From assembly GCF_902459465.1 (NCBI RefSeq), contig NC_047074.1:14198001-14262000 (forward strand): a DNA stretch of 64,000 nucleotides, given 5' to 3'. Below are positions 51,378 through 63,727 of the stretch, piece by piece (the stretch's first letter is position 1; every line of letters starts with the position of its first letter). The position numbers and the translations under genes are program-made. The notes beneath the pieces were generated by a model. That model was not told where the DNA came from and did not search any database. It was given only the letters and a program-made list of their open reading frames with translations. Origin of the DNA: Asterias rubens. Taxonomy: Eukaryota.

Positions 51378-54300
51378 TTAATGAGCTTTCTTGTGGAGCA
51401 CTTTCAACCACTTGAAGAACTTCACCAATGTTCCTTTCGATCCTGGTATCTCCCGTCCAATCTCAGGGGTTGGTTCGGGTGACGTCACGGGAATCAGTCC
51501 GCCGTTGTCGATCCGCACGCGGACGGTCGGTTGTGTTGGTTCAGGTGGCGTCACGGGAACTAATCCGCCATTATCAATTCTGACGCGGACGGTCGGTTTT
51601 GAGTGGCTGTGTTTTCTATGGTGGTGGTGGTGCTTCTTTGTTGGCCGGGAATCGACCACATCACCCCTGTGCTCTGATTGGCTATAGTGACGGCTGTTCT
51701 CCACATTGATTGGCCAAACGTCTGGAGTGACGTCACGTGCATGCCGGTCATGAGACTTGAGAAGGGAAACTCCAAGCAGAACCAGTTTCAGTTTGAGCTG
51801 TGTGTTTGTCTTCGTGTCGAACACTGTGTCTATAAAATGTCCTTTGTATACCTAATGCAAACGGGAAAAAAGGAACAGAAAGGTCATAATAATGAAGTCT
51901 CGGGCCAATGCCACCACGGAGAAACTCTATTCAGGCAACCAGTTCCAGGCTGAAGTCCCCTCGCTGATCAAAACGAGTATCTCGACCATTTTTGAATCTC
52001 GAAAAGATCGCATTTCAGGCAACTTTTTGACATCCAGATTTCAGTGGTGTCCGTTTGTGATTATTGAAGCCACATAGATGCGGTTGGTATCCGCTGAGTG
52101 TCAACTTGCTACACGTGAATGATTCGACTTTTTATATGAAAATATCGCGACAGGTTTTACTCAACAAGCACAATTTTCAGCTCAAATTTTCACTGACTCA
52201 ATATTAATTTACCATATCAGTATTACATTGACAAAAAACAATAATCTATGACCTTATCTTTAAGATACAAAACAGCAAAGATATGACCTTTATAAGAGCC
52301 ATAAACATTATCAAAATAGGGGGCCTTGTTGTTAATCAGTTGTATACTGACATTTGAGCAAAGGTTGCTGTGAGTTTTAGCCTTGCTTAAAAACACTAAA
52401 TCATTAGATTACATCCTTCGGGTGGAATCGGTCATCGAACTTGCGAGATAATAATGAAAGAAAAAAACTCACCCTTGTCACACGAAGTTGTGTGCGTTCA
52501 GATGGTTGATTTCGAGACCTCAAGTTCCAAATCTGAGGTCTCGAAATCAAATTCGTGGAAAATTACGTCTTTCTCGAAAACTATGGCACTTCAGAGGGAG
52601 CCGTTTCTCACAATGTTTTATACCATCAACCTTTCCCCATTACTCATCACCAAGTAAGGTTTTATGCTAATAATTATTTTGAGTAATTACCAATAGTGTC
52701 CACTGCCTTTAAAGCAAATAATTAAGTTTTGTGATTTACCTTCAAAATTTGAAGAGCTTTAAGAATAAGACTCAACTCTAGTTCTTTCAAGTCGACATCC
52801 AAAACAATAACTGTTTTCACGTCCTGAAATAAACAAAACATAGAGACATGCAGTTAATAAGTAGCTTTATTTAGTTGCTTATTGGACGACCTCCTGGGGT
52901 TCAGACCTCGTGGGGTTATTTGAAACGTTTAATAATCAGGGAGTATTGATGAAGAGGGGAGGGGGGAGGAGTGGGAGGAGGAGGAGGAGGGGGAAGGGAG
53001 GAAAACAACAACAGCAACAAAGAAGAGGAAGAAGCCTTTATGCATAGTGGGGTTTGAGGCGTTGCATGGTGAGGTATCAATTTAGTTTGCGGTAACACCA
53101 TGTGTGTGTCTACTCGCCAGGTAGGGTGTTGTTCTTTAGAGAACTGTCTTGCTTGATTCTACCGCGGAGTAGCGAATTCGGGAGACTTTTCAGTTCTGAA
53201 AAGAACTGTCCTTTATGCATTTTATTGTCTAATGTTATAATAACAATATATCAGCACTCGGCAACTTACCTGTAAAATGTGGATGGCTTTTAGGAGCAAA
53301 GTGAGTTTCAAATCGGCAACCAGGTGACCAGCAAAATGTGACGTCAATTTTTTGTCCTGTAATTAAAAAAATTATGTTTATTATTCAAATTCAGACTTTT
53401 AAATTTATTTAAACACTAGTAACAAACCCTTTTAAATAAAAAAAACGAAGAAGGGAACAGATAAATTGATTTTGTAAATGACAATTAAATTTCTTTAAAA
53501 CTTACTTTTAGTAGCAAGATGGCTTTGAGAATCAATTTGAATTTGAGTTCCTCCGTCATCTCACCGTGGCGAGGTAGCATTCTATGGACTTCATCTTTCT
53601 TTGAGGTCTAGAAATTTTAAATAACCAAAAAAGCAATAATTTTTTAGACAGAATATAAATGACACTTTTATAGAGTGTGTCAAAAACATTAAGCAAGTAA
53701 CTTTGTTAGCAGGTTTCCTCCGTCTTACGAGCTACAGTGATTAAAGGAACTGGACACTATAGGTAATTACTTTATATAATGTCATTGATAATATTGAAGT
53801 CTTATATATAGCGCACTCAAAATAACTGTTGCATAAAAAACTTACTTGGTAACGAGCAAAGGAGAGCTGTTGATTTTTGATAGTAAGTATAAAACATTGT
53901 GAGAAACGGCTCCCTCTGAAGTAACATAGTTTTTTTTAGAAATAGGTAAGTTCTCACTCACTTAATATTAAGTATCTGGAGTACACAAAGTAATGCAACA
54001 AGGTTTTTTTCTGTCATTATTCTCTTGCAAATTCGATGAACATTTGAGCGCAAGTGTTCACTGGTTTGTTATTTTATGCATATTTTGGGATACACTGAAG
54101 TGAGAATATTGGTCTTTGGCAATTACCGAACGAGCCTGTTCACTACATAAATGACACAGAATATTTCTTTTCGTACCTTCAATAACTCCAAGGCCTTCAA
54201 GATTAACTCTAACTTGAGATCATCACGCATCGAGTCGGGAAACAGACCGTCAACATCTATCATCTCATCTCCATCCGTAGGCAGCTGAAAAAAAAATGTA

Positions 54301-54880
54301 AAGTCTATGTTACCAAAACGAGGCTGGGAGGTAAATCGTCTGGGACTCTGTAATGAGTAATAGCAGCTTGGAAGTAATTCAGAAACGTAAATTTATTGAG
54401 CTACTAGTGACTCTTTACAATAGATGGTCTGATATCTTGGACAACAAAAAAATTGCAGATCACGACAAAGACAAAGGACAAATTCTCAATTAACCGCTCC
54501 AGATTTTCGGTAATATCTTAAAGACGGTACCTCTTGAACTGAAATATTTACAATATTGTAGATCCACTAAAATATTGTGAAAGATTAAATAAATCGAGCG
54601 GTCCCAAAACAAAATGTAGGCTTGCCTTTAAGCTGGCGTTTGTGCACGTGGCCTATTCAGGATAAATAAATAAAACAAGTCTACTTACAATAGCGACACT
54701 TTCTGAAGACATGATTTCATCTTCATAGTCAGGGATGCTTTCCGTGGCGTTCATCATAGCATCTTCTCCTCCATGGTCCTTCCCTCCGAAGATGTTGGTT
54801 AAGAACATCACGCATCCTCCAGTTGCGATGACAACCACCAAGACCACAACCACGACCAAAAGAAGTATCTTACAACTCAT
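51378..54880 (-). CDS. Orphan secreted protein, 319 aa, with four exon-encoded Leu/Lys helices, a His tract, a 21-aa repeat and a cationic amphipathic C-terminus
   Basis: Exons 54880-54689, 54284-54177, 53607-53506, 52823-52740, 51851-51378; all introns phase 0 with canonical sites; 960 nt. Hydrophobic N-terminus MSCKILLLVVVVVLVVVIATGG. TATATAAA upstream. The internal repeat differs mostly at synonymous sites. Confidence 0.85.
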
Positions 54881-55056
54881 TATTAAGAGAAACTTATTCT
54901 TTGTATTATACACAAATTTATCTAAAACTAAAAAGTCTTACACAACTTCTGGAACTTTTTTTTAGTGCACCGAGGTTCTCGAAATAATGCTGTTGCTTGG
55001 AGTAAATTTTTCTGGAGCTGGAAAAATTGTGTTTGACTCTCTCTAGCAAACCTCAG

Positions 55057-55064: not shown

Positions 55065-57842
55065 GTATTTACCTTGCTAGGTATTTTAGGTTGGGTTTTA
55101 TGAGTTTTTAGTTAATTTTGGGATAAGTTTGTTGTGAGACGGCCCACGCACGGCACTCCTTGACCGTGATGGTTTACATCCATGCTACCGTTTCCTGGGT
55201 CGATGAAACGGTATTCCGAGCAGCGCTGCATGGTGCCTGGGTTTGCTTGACGCACCGGTGTTATTTTAGACGACTCAGCGGACCCTGGTATGTAATTCCT
55301 GGGTTGGTTTTTGCAATTCATGCTTTTGTATCGTCTTCAGTTGTTAAAAAAAACAAAAAAAACAAACAAAAACATCGTGTGGCCATGGACACTCCATTTA
55401 TCTTTGATCTGTTTATATTATTATTAAAAAAAGATAATGACACACATTTGGTAACAACACAGACAATTACCATTTGGGGAGTGGACGGGACAAACCCAAA
55501 TCTTCAACAAATGGGCCCAATCTACTGAAAACACTCTTATTAAAGGTTTTTAGACTGACATTCACTCTCAAATCGAATGAAATTCATGGACAAATCATCT
55601 ACAGGTTGTCAACAGTAGCTACTTTCACTGACTCGACTCCAGTGATTTGCAGACTTAAAAGAAAGAATTGTTATAGATAATAATTATTAGGCCCAACACA
55701 AAGTACATTGGGCTTACAGATAAAGTATTTGTAATTCAAGGGCGGTTTTCCACAAAGTCCATCTTTCTATCCCATGTAAACTGTGTGCAAATTGGTTAAC
55801 TTTTATATTATTTCCAATATTTTGCACGTGCACCCTTCTTTACATTCTTCTCGTTTGTAACTGGCCCAGACCAGTTATAGCGGCCATTGCAATGAAGTTG
55901 TCATTGTGGCGCAATAACAATCCCGTCCAAAATGATTGGGCCACCTGACAATAATAATTATACTCCCCACAGATGTTGTTTTCATCTTATAGTTCTTTAT
56001 TAATGATTCCTTTCCCATTTTATGGTTTGATTAACAGGGATTTAATGAGTCACAGTGGTTTGGTTCCCTGTTAAGAATCTTGACCATTTTAGAATGAGTT
56101 TGTCTTGTCATCATGGACCAATTTCGTGGAGCTGCTCACCAGCCAGACTATCATATCACGTACAATTTGTAGCTGGTATCCTGCTAGTTTCTGCTTGCCA
56201 GACAATTGTTAAGCGATATTTTTCGCTTAAGCGACTTCATGAAATTTGGCCCTGATTCAAACAATGTTCTAGCGAGACCCAATTTCACAAAGCTGTTGTT
56301 AACAGAAAATACCGCTTAGCAAACTTCTCTGCTAATCCAGAAAGTAGTGGGCGCCCCAATGTAGTTTTGCCTGGTAAACTGTTTCTTTTAAGCAACACTT
56401 TTATGTGCCTACAGACTTTGTGAAGTGGGGCCTTGCAGGGTTGTAGACAAACCTAATTGTTGTAGTTGGGACAGAAACTCAACTTGGGCGGTGAATATAA
56501 GTCACTGACTCATATCAAAACACACTATAGACAATGATTGTAGAAATGGGAAAGTTCGGATATGCGTTGTAGACAGGAAATGTTGATTTTAGTCATTCCT
56601 ATTCATGGTGTATGTTCCTTAGAGGATGACTTCATTAGGATCTATCGGTTGGATATTATATTATTGGATTTCCAAATCAATTATTAGATATCGATCGGGC
56701 ATGCCAAATGACGATAGAAATGACCAGGTTGGGCTTGAAACCCGACCAATTTGACTTCACAATTATTGAAATGGGGTTTTTGCGCTTGAATGGTATACCT
56801 TTGGTAATTACTACAAAACAATAATGGCCAGAACAACTGACTTGGTACGAAGCTATTGACAATGTATAACATTTTGAGAAAGAATTGCGATTTTCAGATG
56901 GAGGATTTTAAAAGCATTTCAATCTGAGAAACATCAGATGTTGACAAACTCCATTTTACGGATTACTCTTCCTGCGTGGACATCACCGCCACGACTCTGC
57001 GGTGACGTCTTAAAACGCTACCGCCACATTTAAAATTAATTTTTTGCAGTTTAATTTAAGTATATATTTACTTCGTTTATTTATGATTGAAATGATCGAC
57101 CAATTAAAAAAAAATGAAGGCACGCCTATACTTAGTCTTTAAGGAACTATGGACCAAGCTACCATGCAAGGTTCAAATGATAGGCCTATAACTGAAACCA
57201 CCGGTGCCAAACGATAAGTTTTCGGGGGGGGGGGCACAAGAAGGTGCACCGTATTTTTCGTGGGGTGGGGGGGGGGAGACTTCTACAACCTACCAATTAA
57301 ACGGTTGTTTCCGTTCACTTATTTGTTATACATGATATAATATGACCCGAGTGTCTAAACCGATTGGAGCTGAACATATGGGGTGTGGTATTAGACGTAT
57401 ACGCCCTAAGCCAATTCCCCATCATCGATGATCAGAGGTGATAGGGAATATGATTTGTTCATAATTTCCAACAGTGACAACTGCAAAAGACTACTGTTGC
57501 AGTAGCTACAGATATTGAATACAATCAGTTTAAACACAAATTGGCACAAAACACACCACTTTCAAAACATCAGTTTCGGTGAACCCCGGAAAAGTACAAA
57601 ATGGACTCGGTATACAGAAGGGATGTTCGCCTCGTAGACAAGGAACCGACACAGGAAATCTGTCACACTTTTAAAACAATAGAATCTTTACCTGTCAGTT
57701 AAAATGGCATACGTGCAGTAACATAAGTAGGTCGGACAACTCCTCCTTCAAAAAAATTTGTGTCCAGAACTAAAACTAAAACCATTAATCTAACGTCCAG
57801 GACCCGTTTCCTCATCGGAAGTGCGCACCCTCCCGAGGATTG

Positions 57843-57850
57843 TATATAAA
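57843..57850 (+). promoter_or_regulatory. TATA box of the plus-strand orphan secreted gene
   Basis: TATATAAA, followed ~25 nt later by an Inr-like TCAGATT; ATG at 57979. Confidence 0.7.
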
Positions 57851-57978
57851 GAGGAACCAATCAACATATTCATCAGATTTGTTTTCTGGTGGGTCGTTCT
57901 TGATTTCCGAACCAAAAAAAATTAGCTCTTCAACAGTTTGACTGATTTGGAGCTTGTCCGAGAGACTGGGTTTCAACC

Positions 57979-59622
57979 ATGAATCACGGGTCATTCTTAG
58001 CGGTGTTTCTGCTCCTTGCGTCGGTATCTTACCTCGCCAATGGGGACCGCTGGAACCAGGAGTCACAACAGCCACTCACAGACTGGCAGGTTAGCCTACT
58101 TGCCCAAGATCTGGTAAGTTTTATTTTGAAATATAAACAAAATAAATTCGTCTCTTCTGGAAAGTATTCGGAGCAAGTTTTCTTTTTACGGGACACGTTG
58201 GGTAATTTTTATAAGACCGGTATTCTTGGTGTATTTTTTGTTTTGTTTCATTGGTCATCTAAATTTGCAAGAGAATAATGCAAGAAAAAAACCACCCTTG
58301 TTGCACAAAAATCGTGCAAAGTTACCCCTTTCTCAGCAATTTTACTTCAGAGGGAGCCGTTTCTCACAATGTTTTATATTATCAACGGCTCCCCGTTGCT
58401 CATTATCAAGTAAGTTAATTATGCTAATACTTTGAGCAATTACCAAACGTGTTCTGTGCCTTAATTTAGATTTGTGTCAGGATTTAGACGTTTTTGTGGG
58501 ATGGGGGTTTGCTGAGTGGTTTCCTCCCTGCCATTCGCTTTGTGCGACCCTGGTTCGATTGCCAGACTGAAACTTTGCATGTGGATTGGGGTTTTAGTCT
58601 GTTGGCCTAACTAGTTGTTTTCCTCCCACGTCTAAAACCAAAATTTCATAAACTTGTCTTCTTAACAAAAGTTGGTGTGATGTTTCCATTAGTATACTTT
58701 TCCTTCATATTCAGCTTCGAATCGATTTTTTTATTCACTTGGAGGGTGGTGTTTGGGTGGGGGGGGGGGGGGGTGATGGGCCAGAGTGAATGAACGATCG
58801 GATCCAGTAAATAACTGCCACCTCTCGAAATCTTAAAAACATTATTATACCCGTAGAAACTCTGGCTTAATTACTCGGGTGGGATTCCAACCCAAGACCT
58901 TTGCCATTATAGAGCTGATGTCTTACCAACATAGACTACTGTCATTGCCCAGTAGCTATAGATGCAGTTCGAATCCTATATGTTAGCAGCAGGTATTGCA
59001 TCATTTCAAAAGATTTTAAATTTGCATCGTGATAAAGAATGGGTTAGTTTGACCATAGAGGTAGAAATACCATGGTTATACTGTTACACCGATGTGTATA
59101 AGCACTACATACTAAGTACTTTTACAAGTTCTGTGGACAAAAATCACACAGACATATTTACTCGTGTGGGTGGAGTTTCGCTGCCCATGTCTCATGTTTG
59201 TAAATATTCTGTTTTCCATGTAGCCGGACGAGCTACGTACACTCTATGAGCAGATAATTGATCCCAACGTGGATGAGATCAACAAAGAAAACTACATCTG
59301 GCGAAGCTTTGAGCTCCTCAAATACAGGAAGTACAGACGTTATAGTTGGTTCTACTACTGGCTTCTCGACATCAGTGGGTCCGACCAGCAGCAACTCGGC
59401 AGGCAAACTCCAAAAGGACAAGGGGGACGCACACCACCGAACATCGGGGGATACACTCCAGGCGGACGTACTCCGCCAAACATGGGGGGACACACTCCAG
59501 GGGGACGCACACCGCCGAATCTCGGGGGACGCACGCCCGGTGGACGCACTCCAAAACGCGGCGGACAGAGACCACGACAGAGACAAAGACATGGAAAAGG
59601 TCACGGACGCAATATTGTATAG
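57979..59622 (+). CDS. Orphan secreted Gly/Arg/Thr/Pro-repeat protein, ~177 aa (2 exons)
   Basis: Exon 1 57979-58113 (signal peptide MNHGSFLAVFLLLASVSYLANG; donor CTG|gtaagt, alternative CAG|gttagc at 58089). Exon 2 59224-59622 (acceptor ttttccatgtag); only the phase-0 frame is open from this acceptor. Repeat codons vary at wobble positions (CGC/CGT, ACA/ACT/ACG, CCA/CCG/CCC, AAC/AAT). TATATAAA at 57843, AATAAA at 59752. Confidence 0.82.
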
Positions 59623-62059
59623 ATGAACAGTCGTAAACGGTTATCCATTAAAACAAATTTGAATACCATGCCCAATGTGTGGCAGTGGGTACCCCCTCCA
59701 ACCCACGCAATTTATGCTTAGATGAACAGTCGTAAACTGTTATCCATTTAAAATAAAGTTATAAGCTAGAGGACTTCCTGCCCCGAAATGTTCCCATAAA
59801 ACACTCTTGTCCTCAATGAAGACAAACTAGGGGTTCACCTAACCCTATATAGGACTCTTCCTATGTACTGTAGTGGGGACCCTGCCTCATGTTGAGCACT
59901 ACATGTAGATTCAGCAATACCAAAAGATTAATGAATCATAAGGGTAAACTAAAAACCTGAATAAAACTGTATAAGACAAGCTTTCACTTCACAAAAAATA
60001 AAACAAGTTCTTTCTGGAAGCAAGAGGACAAGCTACATATAAAAACACAAATAAATTTTAGAATCCTCGCATTTGCTAAACTTTAGAAACGCCTCTGTCA
60101 TTTCACACTTTGCCAGTGATCAACATTTGCACACCTGAAGTATTAATAAGCATAAACAGATTCAGAAATTAAATTCAACTGTAGTGGAAGAAAATGTTTA
60201 GTTTTTATTTTAATTTTTAATAAAACAAAGAGAACAAACAAGAAGAAACAGTGATTTGTGTGTGTATTTCGTTTATTTAAACTCACAGCTTTTAATATAA
60301 TGTGAATATGACTGACAGGTACAATGATACTTTTTTATCTGATCACTTAACAAAACAGGTGGGTCAGAACAGAAATAATGACACCCACCCCCAATCTGCC
60401 CTGCCCCATCCAACCCACACCCGCCCCGCCCCATCCCATCCCCAGATAGTGAATATTGATAACATTAAGGTAAAACCAAGCAAAGCAAAAACAGTTCAGA
60501 AGTGTCGCATCAACATCTTATTGGCCAATATTTAATATTTTGAAGCCATTTTAAACTATCTATGTTAAAACTTGGCAGTTGTTAAGTGTTCTTTATTTAC
60601 TTTCATTTCAACTTTTTTTTTTAGTATGGGAAACTGTTAAAAAATGTCTACAAAACGTCCCAACTTTGTGATAAATAGTCTAGGTAACTTGAAAAGTAAT
60701 CCAATTGCAGCCCAAACTGGGCTAAACATGGATAAACATGGATCTGGGTTAAACTGGGATATGAAGTGAATTATGAAGCAGGTATGACAGGAGAATCTGT
60801 TCTCCCCCCCCCCTCAAATGGCAAACTGTGTACAAACTTCTTCTGATAGCGCCCTCTTTTGATTCATCCTCCTTCAGCCAATGTTAATTCCCATATGGGG
60901 GACAGAAACTCCAGGGTCGGGTTTCCCTTTGACACCGCTAGTCAGATAGATTAGGTGACAAAAAGTAGAAAATAAAAATTTCAACAGCCAAAGTTAAGTA
61001 ACGACCATATAGTTAGCATCGGTAACATTGGCCAAGCATATTCTGACTCGCAGAAGGAGAATAATTTGTTCTCATTTGAAAATGTGTACATGAAAATTGA
61101 CTCCGAAATGGAATAAAAAGAAGGAAGTACACATCTTTAAATTCAAACAGGAAATTGGTTGACTATAAAACATCCAATTAGACAGAATCGGTCTTTGGAA
61201 AGCTGACATCAGTATAATATGGAGTATTTATAGTCATCAATGCTGTGTTTAATCTATTGATTATAATAATGGGCGATCAAACGATTATCCTCAATTTACA
61301 TCAAACTTCATCAATTCTATTCTTGTTAAGATAATTGCAAGCCCAACTTATCCCCCCCCTCTGTCTTCTACAGAAATTCTATTAATAAGAAAAAATGAAG
61401 ACGTCAAATGTCTTACGCCTTATCCTTCCATTCGCAGATGAAGCACACAAATACATGCAGAAGCACAAATTCTTGTAATAAGCCTATTCAGAGTTCCAGC
61501 TGCGCATGTCTGTTACTGCTGACAACGCAATTTGTTGCTCTCCCGTGACCTTTTGATAATACCAGCGAGTATTGTCAAAAGGTCACTCGAGAGCAAAAAA
61601 TTGCATAATCAGCAGTAACAGACATGCACAGCTGGAACTCCAAATAGGCTTATGCTTAGCAGAACAGGTTACCAGCCAAACCACCATGTAAAGTATACTG
61701 TATGTGACTGGTTCCCTGCTCATGGTTTTGCGAAGCAGTTTCCTGATACTAGTCCCAAGGCCCAATTTCATAAACCCTGCAAGCATACAAATATATGCTT
61801 AGATAAGCTAAACTCTGTCTTAACAGAAACAGGTTACCAGCCAACGTTCCATGAATGTTAAAATTAGGGGGGCACTGGTGCCCCACAATTGTTTTGCTAA
61901 GCAAAGAACTGTGCTGAGCAGCATTTTCTGCTTAAGCAGCTCTTTGAAATTGCTCAGCTTGTTTCTGGATCATCATCCGATGTAGAAAATGTCACTGTAA
62001 TATACGTCATCCCCCTATTCCCCCGCCAATCTCTGCCACGATCTTGAGAAGTTATCGTC

Positions 62060-63727
62060 TTAAACTTTGGAGGGTGGAGTGTCCTCCTCGATGTATTCAA
62101 ACGGCTCAGGAGCTTCTGGTTCTTCTTCTTCCTCTTCCACCTTGGGTCCACCAGCTGAAAAAGGCAACAAAAGAAAGACAATGATAAGTTAGCAAAATGC
62201 AAGTACAATTTATTAAATGATAGTACATGGCATTTATATGGCGCTTTATACAAAAAAAACAGCGCCACACAATCAACAACAGTATGAAATACGATGGAAA
62301 AAAAAAAAAAAAAAAGCTTGGAAATAGGTGAGCGTAATTTTTGTTGTGCTTAACTACTTATTGTGTTTAAGCAGCACAATGAACTTGGGCCCAGAGCCCA
62401 CTTTCATAGAGCTGCTTGACAGCTGATTTTGTGCTTACTGTGTGATATCCATTTCATAGCGTGCTAAGCGTCAGCACACGAAAAGGTGTGCTAACCTTCT
62501 GGTGCTTACTGCACGAAAATAAATAATGTCACAACGTAAATTTGTGGTGAATGCACAAGATGGCCTTGCTAATCTGTCAAATATGATTACAATTTTTAGC
62601 AATTTTTTATGCTACAGTAAGCACGAAAATTTGCTTAACATGAAGCATCGCTATGCCATTGGGCCCAGTCCTCACTTCACCCCTGTTCTATTTATGTCTG
62701 AAAGCTTTTAAGTGATCTAGAAATTAATGAACTGTAAAATTAAAAGTTTTGTGACTGAAGAATCCTTAATGATGTTTATGTCCGCTATGAGGACATCGTT
62801 GTTGATTGCCTCGGGCCTTGAGATTTCTCCGTCCAGTTTAAGAAACAAGCTCTTTCTTAATACTGACCTGGGACATTAAGAACGATTTCTTCTGGTTCAT
62901 CTTTAGCCGTGTCTTTCATCATAATTATTCCTCCATCAGACAGCTGTAATAAAGGAGATGAGAAAGACAAATGTACATGACAGATTGGATAGACACCAAC
63001 AGAAACATAACAGGAAACCAACAAAAACACCAACAGAAATACAATGACAGTTTGATGTTTTTTTCTTTAGCTCTTTTTAAAACATCTATCAATATTGTGT
63101 AATTATCATACAGTGGTTTATTTGGCTTTCACGATCAAAATTTAGGCTGTCACTCTTTTGTTTTTATCTATAAAGGCAACCTACACTGTGGACAGTTAAC
63201 TAAATTTCGTTCAGAAGGAAGAACAAACTTAAAATCTACATTCTATATTTACAAAGGATAACTGGAATAAGGTTTTTGTGTAGAATGAGGACCCTTGAAC
63301 AAAATTGCATCAACAGTTTCAGAGTAAATAAGACACAACAGTCCATTTGTGGCAACCATTTTGAGGACATTATTAGTACCCGTGTTCAGGGCACATTTGA
63401 GAATGATTTTAAATAAACCATAAACAATACCCCCAAAACGTAACTGACCTGTTTGACTGGGACGTATCTGGACTTATCGACCGTTGTTAAGACTTTGAGC
63501 TGAGCAACCATAACTCTCGCTGGAGAGTTCAATATCTCAAACGATGGCTCAATTTTCTTCTCTTTCTTCTTAGGCTCCACCTCCGGTTCCTCTTCCATCT
63601 TCTCATCTTTCTTATCCTTGGTGTCTTTTCCTGCATCTTTGGAATCCTTCTTTTCTTTTTCCTTCTTGTCTTCTTTTTCTTTCTTCTCTTTGTCGGCAAC
63701 CTTTTCTTCCTCTTTGATTGGTTCATC
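62060..63727 (-). CDS. PSMD1: 26S proteasome non-ATPase regulatory subunit 1 (RPN2), last three coding exons; 5' part lies beyond the window
   Basis: Exons 63727-63449, 62943-62868, 62154-62060 with consistent phases. EPSFEILNSPARVMVAQLKVLT, LSDGGIIMMKDT and GPKVEEEEEEPEAPEPFEYIEED match the recalled human PSMD1 C-terminus ([22 protein letters not shown] ... EPEPPEPFEYIDD). Confidence 0.95.
62395..62666. mobile_element. MITE, GGCCCAATTTCA family, abutting another copy across a CAG
   Basis: ...cttgggcc-CAG-agcccactttcatagagctgc ... ccattgggcc-CAG. Confidence 0.65.

What the first reader, a model, noticed from the sequence alone, without database searches (positions are those of the whole stretch)
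57979..59622. Orphan secreted protein with an aromatic-cationic core and GGRTPPNxGGxTP repeats
The model reads: signal peptide, acidic segment (PDELRTLYEQIIDPNVDEINKE), Trp/Tyr/Arg-rich KYRKYRRYSWFYYWLL, three 13-aa repeats GGRTPPN(I/M/L)GG(Y/H/R)TP plus GGRTP, and an RPRQRQRHGKGHGRNIV tail. The last ~75 aa have about 15 Arg/Lys and no acidic residue. Repeat variation falls on wobble positions, which fixes the reading frame even though ORFs overlap here in several frames on both strands. The GxRTP-xx-GxxTP pattern recalls the SPT5 C-terminal repeats (established motif), unexpected in a secreted protein. The two-exon leader-plus-repeat layout loosely recalls echinoid Transformer (185/333) immune genes, but I see no sequence match. 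Inference: Pro/Arg/Gly-rich antimicrobial precursor, coacervating adhesive, or gamete-surface protein.
Basis: partly seen in the sequence, partly recalled or inferred. Interest (0 to 1): 0.72.

Follow-up and report, generated by a model that had tools for sequence, protein, structure and literature searches.

The report
Starfish-only secreted protein, cationic repeat tail

Summary
Spliced transcript contigs from four public runs (four studies, three organism labels) carry that junction. The product is identical to the 177-aa NCBI model "uncharacterized protein LOC117298579".

"Orphan" is only partly right. Orthologues exist in Asterias amurensis, Patiria miniata and Acanthaster planci, plus one unlabelled ENA contig. 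They share the intron position, the TATA promoter and the gene neighbourhood: a divergent starfish-only secreted gene upstream and PSMD1 downstream. Nothing was found outside starfish, and the gene is single-copy.

AlphaFold2 predicts a confident four-helix, aromatic-rich head (residues 31-98, pLDDT 81-93) and a disordered tail. The tail (net charge +14) keeps a periodic G-x-R-T-P motif in every species. It is at least as constrained as the head, with dN/dS of 0.06 and 0.11.

The SPT5-repeat likeness is low-complexity convergence. Membership of the Transformer, apidaecin and spicule-matrix families fails.

Function is unknown. My best guess, with low confidence, is an intact extracellular protein that binds negatively charged partners through its tail. 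A host-defence role comes second.

The parts
57843..57851 (+). TATA box (TATATAAAG) of the gene's promoter
   Evidence: Read in the sequence. The 5' ends of transcript contigs lie 35-55 nt downstream, at 57886, 57892 and 57898. TATA boxes sit at the equivalent place in Patiria and Acanthaster.
57886..57978 (+). 5' UTR (start approximate, taken from contig ends)
   Evidence: Contigs X1 (57886), X7 (57892) and X10 (57898) begin here (table 8). By eye I see no upstream ATG.
57979..58113 (+). Exon 1 coding part: signal peptide (residues 1-22, 57979-58044) plus 23 variable residues and the start of the helical head
   Evidence: Translation; identical to P0001 residues 1-45; profile match of 54 bits.
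58114..59223 (+). Phase-0 GT..AG intron (1110 nt) carrying dispersed repeats
   Evidence: A joint that skips 1110 nt, GT..AG, is present in one contig each of X1, X10, X4 and X7 (table 5). The intron sits at the same position in A. amurensis, Patiria and Acanthaster.
59224..59382 (+). Exon 2, first part: rest of the four-helix aromatic head (residues 46-98), holding the invariant ENYIW..FELL...KY..Y.WFY.WL...SG core
   Evidence: Alignment A2 invariant columns. AlphaFold2 helices 47-57, 63-77 and 80-96 with pLDDT about 90.
59383..59619 (+). Exon 2, second part: disordered cationic Gly/Arg/Pro/Thr tail (residues 99-177, net +14)
   Evidence: pLDDT 39-46; composition; dN/dS 0.06 against A. amurensis.
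59422..59553 (+). Three in-frame 39-nt (13-aa) GGRTPPNxGGxTP units plus one GGRTP
   Evidence: Tandem Repeats Finder: period 39, 3.3 copies. 9 of 12 variable columns are at codon position 3.
59620..59622 (+). Stop codon TAG
59623..59757 (+). 3' UTR (minimum extent). It contains a 34-nt direct duplication that includes the stop codon (59620-59653 and 59719-59752) and AATAAA at 59752-59757.
   Evidence: Contigs end at 59728 (X1) and 59753 (X10), while X4 and X7 run past 59800. Repeat.

Best explanation
Shown:
- This is the single-copy, TATA-driven, two-exon gene LOC117298579 of Asterias rubens. It is transcribed and spliced as predicted.
- It is one member of an undescribed family seen so far only in starfish (Asterias, Patiria, Acanthaster and one unlabelled contig).
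- The family sits in a conserved arrangement: head-to-head with another starfish-only secreted gene, and upstream of PSMD1.

Predicted:
- After removal of a 22-residue leader, the 155-aa product (pI about 10.2) has two parts.
- The first is a compact four-helix head. Its last two helices carry an invariant cluster of Trp, Tyr and Phe.
- The second is an intrinsically disordered, strongly cationic tail built on a periodic G-x-(R/H)-T-P motif with several X-Pro-Gly triplets.

Inferred mechanism (about one chance in three):
- The protein works intact outside the cell, not as a cleaved peptide precursor.
- The tail acts as a flexible multivalent binder of a conserved negatively charged partner, such as sulfated glycans or collagen-associated matrix, or less likely microbial surfaces. 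Its T-P and P-G motifs may be modification sites.
- The head supplies a second, specific contact or self-association.
For: Gene reality:
- The junction is present in 4 runs from 4 studies.
- The product is identical to the NCBI model.

Family and synteny:
- The exhaustive HMMER search found only starfish relatives, as did the profile search.
- Sources are named.
- Exon structure and intron phase are conserved.
- The neighbours are conserved in four genomes.
- The gene is single-copy by both protein and profile search.

Architecture:
- AlphaFold2 gives pLDDT 81-93 for residues 31-98 and below 50 for the tail.

The tail is functional, not a spacer:
- Repeat variation is synonymous.
- dN/dS of the tail is 0.06 (A. 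rubens vs A. amurensis; 1 non-synonymous, 6 synonymous changes). It is 0.11 for Patiria vs Acanthaster at dS of about 0.85. The head gives 0.46 and 0.15.

Works intact:
- In alignment A2, the only dibasic pair present in all species lies inside helix 4 of the head. There is no conserved site between head and tail or between repeats.

Broad expression:
- More than half of the exon-2 words are held by organism-A runs from six different studies.
Against: - There is no protein-level evidence that it is secreted, and no tissue or cell type is known. Run labels were coded and only one read-laying run was allowed.
- The signal peptide and the lack of processing are inferred from sequence alone.
- The AlphaFold2 model rests on a five-sequence alignment.
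- The dN/dS contrast within Asterias rests on 16 changes.
- A cationic tail is equally compatible with membrane attack or with condensate formation.
- The protein was not found in the Patiria skeletal-proteome supplements. It is not among the 16 described Asterias footprint proteins. So two obvious extracellular materials give no support.
- One organism-A run (X25) held none of its words, so expression is not universal.
Confidence: 0.45

Rival explanations
1. Host-defence protein or antimicrobial-peptide precursor. The conserved head would act as a pro-domain (cathelicidin-like logic). The Gly/Arg/Pro tail (Gly/His/Arg in valvatid starfish) would be the microbe-binding or membrane-active part, possibly released by proteolysis.
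For: - The layout is leader, partly acidic head (net -8 for residues 23-70), then a tail of +14.
- The valvatid tails are rich in Gly, His and Arg, which recalls known Gly/His-rich antifungal peptides (from my own knowledge, not tested here).
- The nearest ESM Atlas cluster is apidaecin-like, but at 0.76, below the level the tool calls meaningful.
- The gene lies head-to-head with another secreted lineage-restricted gene.
Against: - The locus is single-copy and syntenic, with no expansions.
- The tail is under strong purifying selection, not diversifying selection.
- There is no conserved cleavage site between head and tail.
- There is no Pfam hit to apidaecin or cathelicidin models.
- No induction data exist.
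Confidence: 0.2
2. Self-associating (coacervating) material protein. Arg residues of the tail would pair with the Tyr/Trp-rich head of neighbouring molecules (cation-pi contacts). This would give a dense secretory-granule phase, glue, coat or connective-tissue cross-linker.
For: - Seven aromatic residues are invariant in helices 3-4 (W71, F74, Y82, Y85, W87, F88, Y89 and W91 are among the invariant columns). This is next to an RGG-like tail.
- Contig depth is high in several transcript libraries.
I did not check it.
Against: - The aromatic residues are predicted to form the core of a folded domain, not free stickers.
- The protein is not among the described footprint proteins, which are all large multi-domain proteins.
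- It was not found in the skeletal-proteome supplements.
- Only one Tyr lies in the tail, so DOPA-type chemistry is unlikely.
Confidence: 0.12
3. Signalling-peptide or hormone precursor. The head or short tail peptides would act as ligands.
For: - It is a small secreted protein with strong sequence constraint on both parts.
- Asterias has K-R at residues 156-157 and R-R at 83-84.
Against: - Those basic pairs are not conserved in Patiria or Acanthaster, apart from K/R-K inside a helix.
- The repeats are not separated by processing sites, and there is no C-terminal Gly-basic amidation signal.
- Full-text searches with the sequence motifs and gene identifiers found no paper, including the starfish neuropeptide literature held in the library.
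Confidence: 0.07
4. Gamete-surface or egg-coat protein (bindin-like logic: a conserved core flanked by Gly-rich repeats).
For: The architecture loosely recalls a conserved helical core plus Gly-rich repeats (from my own knowledge of sea-urchin bindin).
Against: - Selection is purifying, and repeat number is identical in A. rubens, A. amurensis and the organism-B transcript.
- Transcripts are present in many libraries from at least six studies, which is unlike a gonad-restricted gene.
Confidence: 0.04
5. The tail derives from, or works like, the SPT5 C-terminal repeat. On this reading the protein is nuclear and its N-terminal hydrophobic stretch is not a leader.
For: - The homologue P0003 scores 27.3 bits on PF12815, above the 25.4 cut-off.
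- The family profile touches yeast SPT5 at E 0.06.
- The G-x-R/Q-T-P motif is shared with the species' own SUPT5H exon.
Against: - The A. rubens, A. amurensis, Patiria and Acanthaster proteins get no PF12815 hit.
- There is no nucleotide similarity to the SUPT5H repeat exon, and protein similarity is only 36-48% over 21-28 residues.
- PF12815 also hits about 24 low-complexity places, including a translated minisatellite.
- There are no NGN or KOW domains.
- A hydrophobic leader is conserved in all full-length orthologues.
Confidence: 0.02

Closest known systems
Uncharacterised starfish orthologues: Asterias amurensis XP_071798341.1, Patiria miniata LOC119724071 (XP_038050919.1), Acanthaster planci LOC110980972
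   Same: True homologues (E 2e-27 and better). They share the leader, the invariant aromatic helical core, the G-x-R-T-P cationic tail, the two-exon structure with the same phase-0 intron, the TATA promoter and the same flanking genes.
   Different: The repeat unit was remodelled between orders: 13-aa GGRTPPNxGGxTP in Asterias, against roughly 9-10-aa GGPG(G/R)RTPxH with many His in Patiria, Acanthaster and the ENA fragment. None of them has a described function.
SPT5 (SUPT5H) C-terminal repeats, Pfam PF12815
   Same: A short periodic Gly/Ser-Arg/Gln-Thr-Pro motif. One homologue passes the Pfam cut-off.
   Different: The SPT5 repeats belong to a nuclear elongation factor with NGN and KOW domains. 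This protein has a leader and no such domains. The A. rubens protein gets no Pfam hit and shows no DNA similarity to the species' own SUPT5H exon. The model is promiscuous for any periodic T-P repeat.
Sea-urchin SpTransformer (Sp185/333) immune proteins
   Same: Echinoderm-restricted, with two exons, a leader, and a disordered Gly/Arg-rich (and in valvatids His-rich) cationic product. The description of SpTransformer is from my own knowledge.
   Different: Those form a large, hypervariable, clustered multigene family of echinoids. This gene is single-copy, syntenic and under purifying selection. It has a folded head and no detectable sequence similarity. Here the intron falls 23 residues after the leader, not directly behind it.
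Cathelicidin-type and apidaecin-type antimicrobial precursors
   Same: The logic of leader, then a conserved non-cationic head, then a cationic Pro/Gly/Arg-rich C-terminal part with internal repeats. The nearest ESM Atlas cluster is apidaecin-like at a sub-threshold score.
   Different: There is no cathelin or apidaecin Pfam match. There are no processing spacers or a conserved cleavage site, no cysteines in the head, and the tail is conserved rather than hypervariable.
Sea-urchin spicule-matrix proteins (SM50 group)
   Same: Secreted, basic, with Pro/Gly-rich tandem repeats of about 13 residues (from my own knowledge).
   Different: There is no C-type lectin domain. The sea-star skeletal proteome is reported to lack such proteins (PMC5460417), and the Patiria orthologue's motifs are absent from that paper's supplements.

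Membership tests
SPT5 C-terminal repeat (PF12815) | Pfam PF12815 match above the gathering score in this protein | tested here: not met
   No hit at E up to 10 for the A. rubens exons or the full protein, nor for the A. amurensis, Patiria and Acanthaster proteins. Only the ENA fragment P0003 scores 27.3 against the 25.4 cut-off.
SPT5 C-terminal repeat (PF12815) | Descent from, or DNA similarity to, the species' own SUPT5H repeat exon | tested here: not met
   blastn-short of the tail against L004 (the SUPT5H repeat exon) gave nothing. tblastn gave 36-48% over 21-28 aa, E 0.016 or worse in a six-locus database.
SPT5 C-terminal repeat (PF12815) | NGN and KOW domains upstream, in a nuclear protein | tested here: not met
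   No Pfam domains at all. An N-terminal hydrophobic leader is conserved in the orthologues.
SpTransformer (Sp185/333) | Multigene, clustered, highly diverse family | tested here: not met
   The only matches in the 418-Mb genome, with the protein and with the family profile, are the gene's own two exons. One orthologue per species sits in conserved synteny.
SpTransformer (Sp185/333) | Sequence similarity to 185/333 proteins | tested here: not met
   An exhaustive phmmer search of 1.84 billion representatives returned only starfish relatives and one bacterial low-complexity hit. I did not verify that 185/333 sequences are in that library.
Apidaecin-type multi-peptide precursor (PF00807) | Pfam match, and repeats separated by processing spacers or dibasic sites | tested here: not met
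   No Pfam hit. The repeat units abut directly, with no basic pair or spacer between them.
Echinoderm spicule-matrix proteins (SM50 group) | C-type lectin domain joined to Pro/Gly-rich repeats, and presence in the skeletal proteome | tested here: not met
   No lectin domain. The orthologue's motifs are absent from the two held supplements of the Patiria skeletal proteome.
Sea-star footprint (adhesive) proteins Sfp1-16 | Identified in Asterias rubens footprints and expressed in tube-foot adhesive gland cells | tested here: inconclusive
   The paper describes 16 footprint proteins by their conserved functional domains, mostly large multi-domain proteins. Its supplements are not held, so no sequence comparison was possible.
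New starfish family (LOC117298579 / LOC119724071 / LOC110980972) | Leader, then the invariant ENYIW..FELL...KY..Y.WFY.WL...SG head, then a G-x-R-T-P cationic tail; two exons with a phase-0 intron before P-x-ELR; located between the divergent secreted neighbour and PSMD1 | tested here: met
   Alignment A2, exon maps, synteny.

The most novel reading that the evidence does not exclude
The gene and its divergently transcribed neighbour are both starfish-only, both apparently secreted, and have stayed head-to-head since forcipulatid and valvatid starfish split. They could encode two interacting parts of an asteroid-specific extracellular system, for instance one that controls connective tissue or the epidermal coat. 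In that reading the strictly conserved periodic R-T-P / X-Pro-Gly tail is a modification or docking code read by a conserved partner.
Probability: 0.1. Interest if true: 0.6.

Novelty: new variant of a known kind. Interest (0 to 1): 0.33.

Why it matters
It adds one well-supported member to the large set of class-restricted secreted genes in starfish. It comes with a defined family signature, a conserved gene pair and a testable structural plan: a folded aromatic head plus a sequence-constrained cationic disordered tail.

Disordered repeat tails usually drift. One that evolves more slowly than its folded partner points to a specific binding or modification code worth finding.

Practically, the report corrects the "orphan" label and shows that the Pfam Spt5-CTD model over-calls periodic T-P repeats. 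It also flags a probably mis-started Acanthaster gene model. Without an expression site or an assay, it remains one uncharacterised lineage-specific gene among many.

Tried and rejected
- **Pfam.** Scans of both exons and all family members gave nothing, apart from the promiscuous PF12815 hit on one fragment.
- **ESM Atlas.** The whole protein gave one sub-threshold apidaecin-like lead. The head and the tail searched separately gave nothing.
- **Fold searches of the AlphaFold2 model.**
  - Foldseek against AFDB clusters had a best E of 0.06, and against PDB a best E of 2.3.
  - VIA-align against 48,161 chains had a best Z of 6.0, well under the roughly 13 the tool advises for helical bundles.
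  - The ESM Atlas structure search had TM of 0.32 or less.
  - The head is a generic small helical bundle with no informative relative.
- **Profile against PDB sequences.** Only E of 0.017 or worse.
- **Homology between this gene and its divergent neighbour.** None, with a best E of 0.2 on a tiny database.
- **Promoter alignment across three species.** A conserved block is shared only by Patiria and Acanthaster. Nothing is shared with Asterias beyond the TATA box.
- **Literature.** Gene identifiers, accessions and peptide motifs are in no held paper. The motifs are absent from the supplements of the Patiria skeletal proteome, the crown-of-thorns spine secretome and the gravid crown-of-thorns expression study.
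- **Rfam and tRNA scans of the locus.** Nothing.
- **Complex prediction.** I sent no job, either with the neighbour's product or as a homo-oligomer. I make no binding claim, and gene adjacency alone is not sufficient reason.
- **ENA contig.** The contig carrying fragment P0003 could not be fetched because the file is too large, so its species is unknown.
Full report
**1. What is in the sequence**

The window is G000:C14:14198001-14262000 of a 418-Mb assembly. The product is identical to NCBI's "uncharacterized protein LOC117298579 [Asterias rubens]", 177 aa.

- Exon 1 (57979-58113) encodes 45 residues, starting with a typical leader: a short polar start, an 11-residue hydrophobic run, then A-N-G before Asp23.
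- Exon 2 (59224-59622) encodes 132 residues and the stop codon.
- A TATATAAAG box lies at 57843-57851.
- Tandem Repeats Finder reports a 39-nt period, 3.3 copies, at 59421-59549. In frame these are three 13-aa GGRTPPNxGGxTP units plus GGRTP.
- 9 of the 12 variable columns among the three units are third codon positions. Shifting the frame destroys this pattern.
- Residues 23-70 have net charge -8, residues 71-98 have +4, and residues 99-177 have +14 with a single Asp. The mature protein has a pI of about 10.2.
- The other long ORFs over exon 2 (59258-59626 +, 59233-59604 -) are side effects of a stop-poor repeat.

**2. Expression and splicing**

Exon-2 words are held by many runs. Organism-A runs from six studies hold more than half of them. 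Their share of the whole stretch including the intron is only about a quarter, as expected for RNA.

I laid four runs on 57800-59800. They came from four studies and carried three organism labels. Each gave one contig that joins 58113 to 59224, with GT..AG ends and 1110 nt skipped.

- Contigs start at 57886-57898, which is 35-55 nt after the TATA box.
- They end at 59728 or 59753, or run past 59800.
- All four runs read Ala17 and Arg135 where the reference has Ser and His.
- One run holds a second allele with a stop at codon 173.
- The contigs cannot tell tissue, strand or level, and run labels were coded. The site of expression is therefore unknown. One organism-A run held none of the words.

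**3. Relatives**

A word-indexed search with exon 2 found only the protein itself. The exhaustive HMMER search of 1.84 billion representatives found the following:

- the Patiria miniata protein P0002 (158 aa, E 2e-27);
- an exon-2 fragment from an ENA contig, P0003 (E 5e-20);
- P0004 (99 aa, E 5e-20), which is exon 1 read on into the intron, not a relative;
- a bacterial membrane protein that matches the repeats only (E 5e-5), which I take to be chance composition.

Cluster look-up and a profile search added Asterias amurensis (95% identical, same length and repeat number) and Acanthaster planci LOC110980972. The annotated Acanthaster start lies about 15 nt after the TATA box. The real start is probably Met39, which gives a normal leader.

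Nothing outside starfish was found. In A. rubens the gene is single-copy, by protein and by profile search.

All four genomic copies share these features:

- two exons;
- the same phase-0 intron, placed before P-x-E-L-R;
- a TATA box;

The neighbour is not detectably homologous to this gene. So "orphan" should read [quoted passage not shown].

**4. Architecture and constraint**

The alignment has an invariant core, E-N-Y-I-W..F-E-L-L...K-Y..Y.W-F-Y.W-L...S-G, and a tail in which G, R, T and P recur at fixed spacing.

AlphaFold2, run on the five-sequence alignment, predicts helices at 35-42, 47-57, 63-77 and 80-96. pLDDT is 81-93 for residues 31-98 and about 40 for the tail.

Fold searches return only generic helical-bundle matches: Foldseek E of 0.06 or worse, a best VIA Z of 6.0, and Atlas TM of 0.32 or less.

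dN/dS values:

| Comparison | Head | Tail |
|---|---|---|
| A. rubens vs A. amurensis | 0.46 (6 non-synonymous, 3 synonymous) | 0.06 (1 non-synonymous, 6 synonymous) |
| Patiria vs Acanthaster (dS about 0.85) | 0.15 | 0.11 |

The counts within Asterias are small, but both comparisons agree. The disordered tail is at least as constrained as the folded head.

Between orders the repeat unit was remodelled: 13-aa GGRTPPNxGGxTP against roughly 9-10-aa GGPG(G/R)RTPxH. The G-x-(R/H)-T-P motif and three to five X-Pro-Gly triplets were kept. No basic pair is conserved between head and tail or between repeats. The only basic pair shared by all species lies inside helix 4.

**5. Comparison with known things**

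*SPT5 repeats.*
Fragment P0003 passes PF12815 (27.3 bits against a 25.4 cut-off), and the family profile touches yeast SPT5 at E 0.06.
- The A. rubens protein and the three full-length orthologues do not hit the model, however.
- The species' own SUPT5H repeat exon (L004) shares only the G-S-R/Q-T-P motif, with no DNA similarity.
- The model matches about 24 low-complexity places in this genome. One is a translated 30-nt minisatellite beside a DLD exon.
- I read this as convergence of a short motif, not kinship.

*Transformer (185/333).* It fails on copy number, diversity, sequence and the presence of a folded head.

*Apidaecin and cathelicidin.* There is no model match and no processing sites. 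Only the general logic is shared: leader, conserved head, cationic tail.

*Spicule-matrix proteins.* There is no lectin domain. The Patiria orthologue's motifs are absent from that species' skeletal-proteome supplements.

*Footprint adhesives.* The 16 described proteins are characterised by their conserved domains and are mostly large multi-domain proteins.

*Literature.* No held paper contains the gene identifiers or peptide motifs.

**6. How it most likely works**

Shown: a real, spliced, single-copy, conserved gene.

Predicted: a secreted protein with a folded aromatic head and a disordered cationic tail.

Inferred:
- The tail has no conserved cleavage site and evolves under strong purifying selection. 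I therefore think the protein acts intact.
- I think the tail recognises a conserved partner rather than an evolving target such as microbes or gametes.
- A +14 Gly/Arg/Pro tail is best suited to negatively charged polymers, such as the sulfated glycans and collagen-associated matrix in which starfish tissues are rich (my own knowledge).
- The T-P and X-Pro-Gly motifs are plausible O-glycosylation or prolyl-hydroxylation sites (my own knowledge, untested).

I give this about one chance in three as a mechanism. The rivals are host defence (0.2), self-coacervating material (0.12), signalling precursor (0.07), gamete protein (0.04) and an SPT5-like nuclear role (0.02).

**7. Verdict**

"Orphan" and the SPT5 and Transformer echoes are corrected.

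This is a sound but ordinary example of a lineage-restricted secreted gene. Its one unusual feature is a disordered repeat tail under tighter constraint than the folded domain. It also sits in a gene pair that has stayed head-to-head since the two starfish orders split.

Noticed in passing
window 58336-58402 and 58872-58938 (inside the intron): Two short dispersed-repeat pieces are matched at 85-95% by thousands of transcript contigs in every run. Summed depth is up to about 1.3 million for the first and about 27 thousand for the second. No tRNA or Rfam match. They are probably SINE- or MITE-like elements common in starfish transcripts.
   Followed up: partly
window 59620-59653 and 59719-59752: A 34-nt direct duplication (94% identical, spacing 99 nt) begins with the gene's own stop codon, so the end of the coding region is repeated in the 3' UTR.
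   Followed up: no
window 59605: In run X7 (organism C) one of two contigs over 59532-59654 reads GGA>TGA. This is a stop at codon 173 that removes the last five residues. The other contig keeps Gly. It is possibly a segregating truncation allele.
   Followed up: no
window 58027 and 59492: The reference alleles Ser17 and His135 are contradicted by all four runs laid, which read Ala17 and Arg135. A. amurensis also has Ala and Arg. The reference individual carries minority alleles, or these are errors.
   Followed up: partly
L003:10001-10114 (Acanthaster planci LOC110980972): The annotated start codon lies only about 15 nt after the TATA box and adds 38 residues with no counterpart in other species. 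Met39 gives a normal leader, so the public model probably starts too early.
   Followed up: partly
L009:774-1673 (G000:C2, near 8945962): A 30-nt minisatellite of about 30 copies lies next to a dihydrolipoamide-dehydrogenase-like exon. It translates to RTPTLGGLSY repeats and passes the Pfam Spt5-CTD cut-off. This is an example of that model over-calling periodic T-P repeats.
   Followed up: yes
window 51381-54910 (-) and 62086-63550 (-): The flanking genes are a starfish-only no-Pfam gene transcribed divergently and PSMD1/RPN2. Both keep their order and orientation in A. amurensis, Patiria and Acanthaster. The intergenic gap to the divergent neighbour is about 3 kb in Asterias and about 1.8-1.9 kb in the valvatids.
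   Followed up: partly
L002:9720-9800 and L003:9790-9850: A block of about 30 nt (GAGGATGGGCCATGAAATGACAAAAA) lies roughly 130 nt upstream of the TATA box. It is nearly identical in Patiria and Acanthaster but not recognisable in Asterias. It is a candidate valvatid regulatory element.
   Followed up: no
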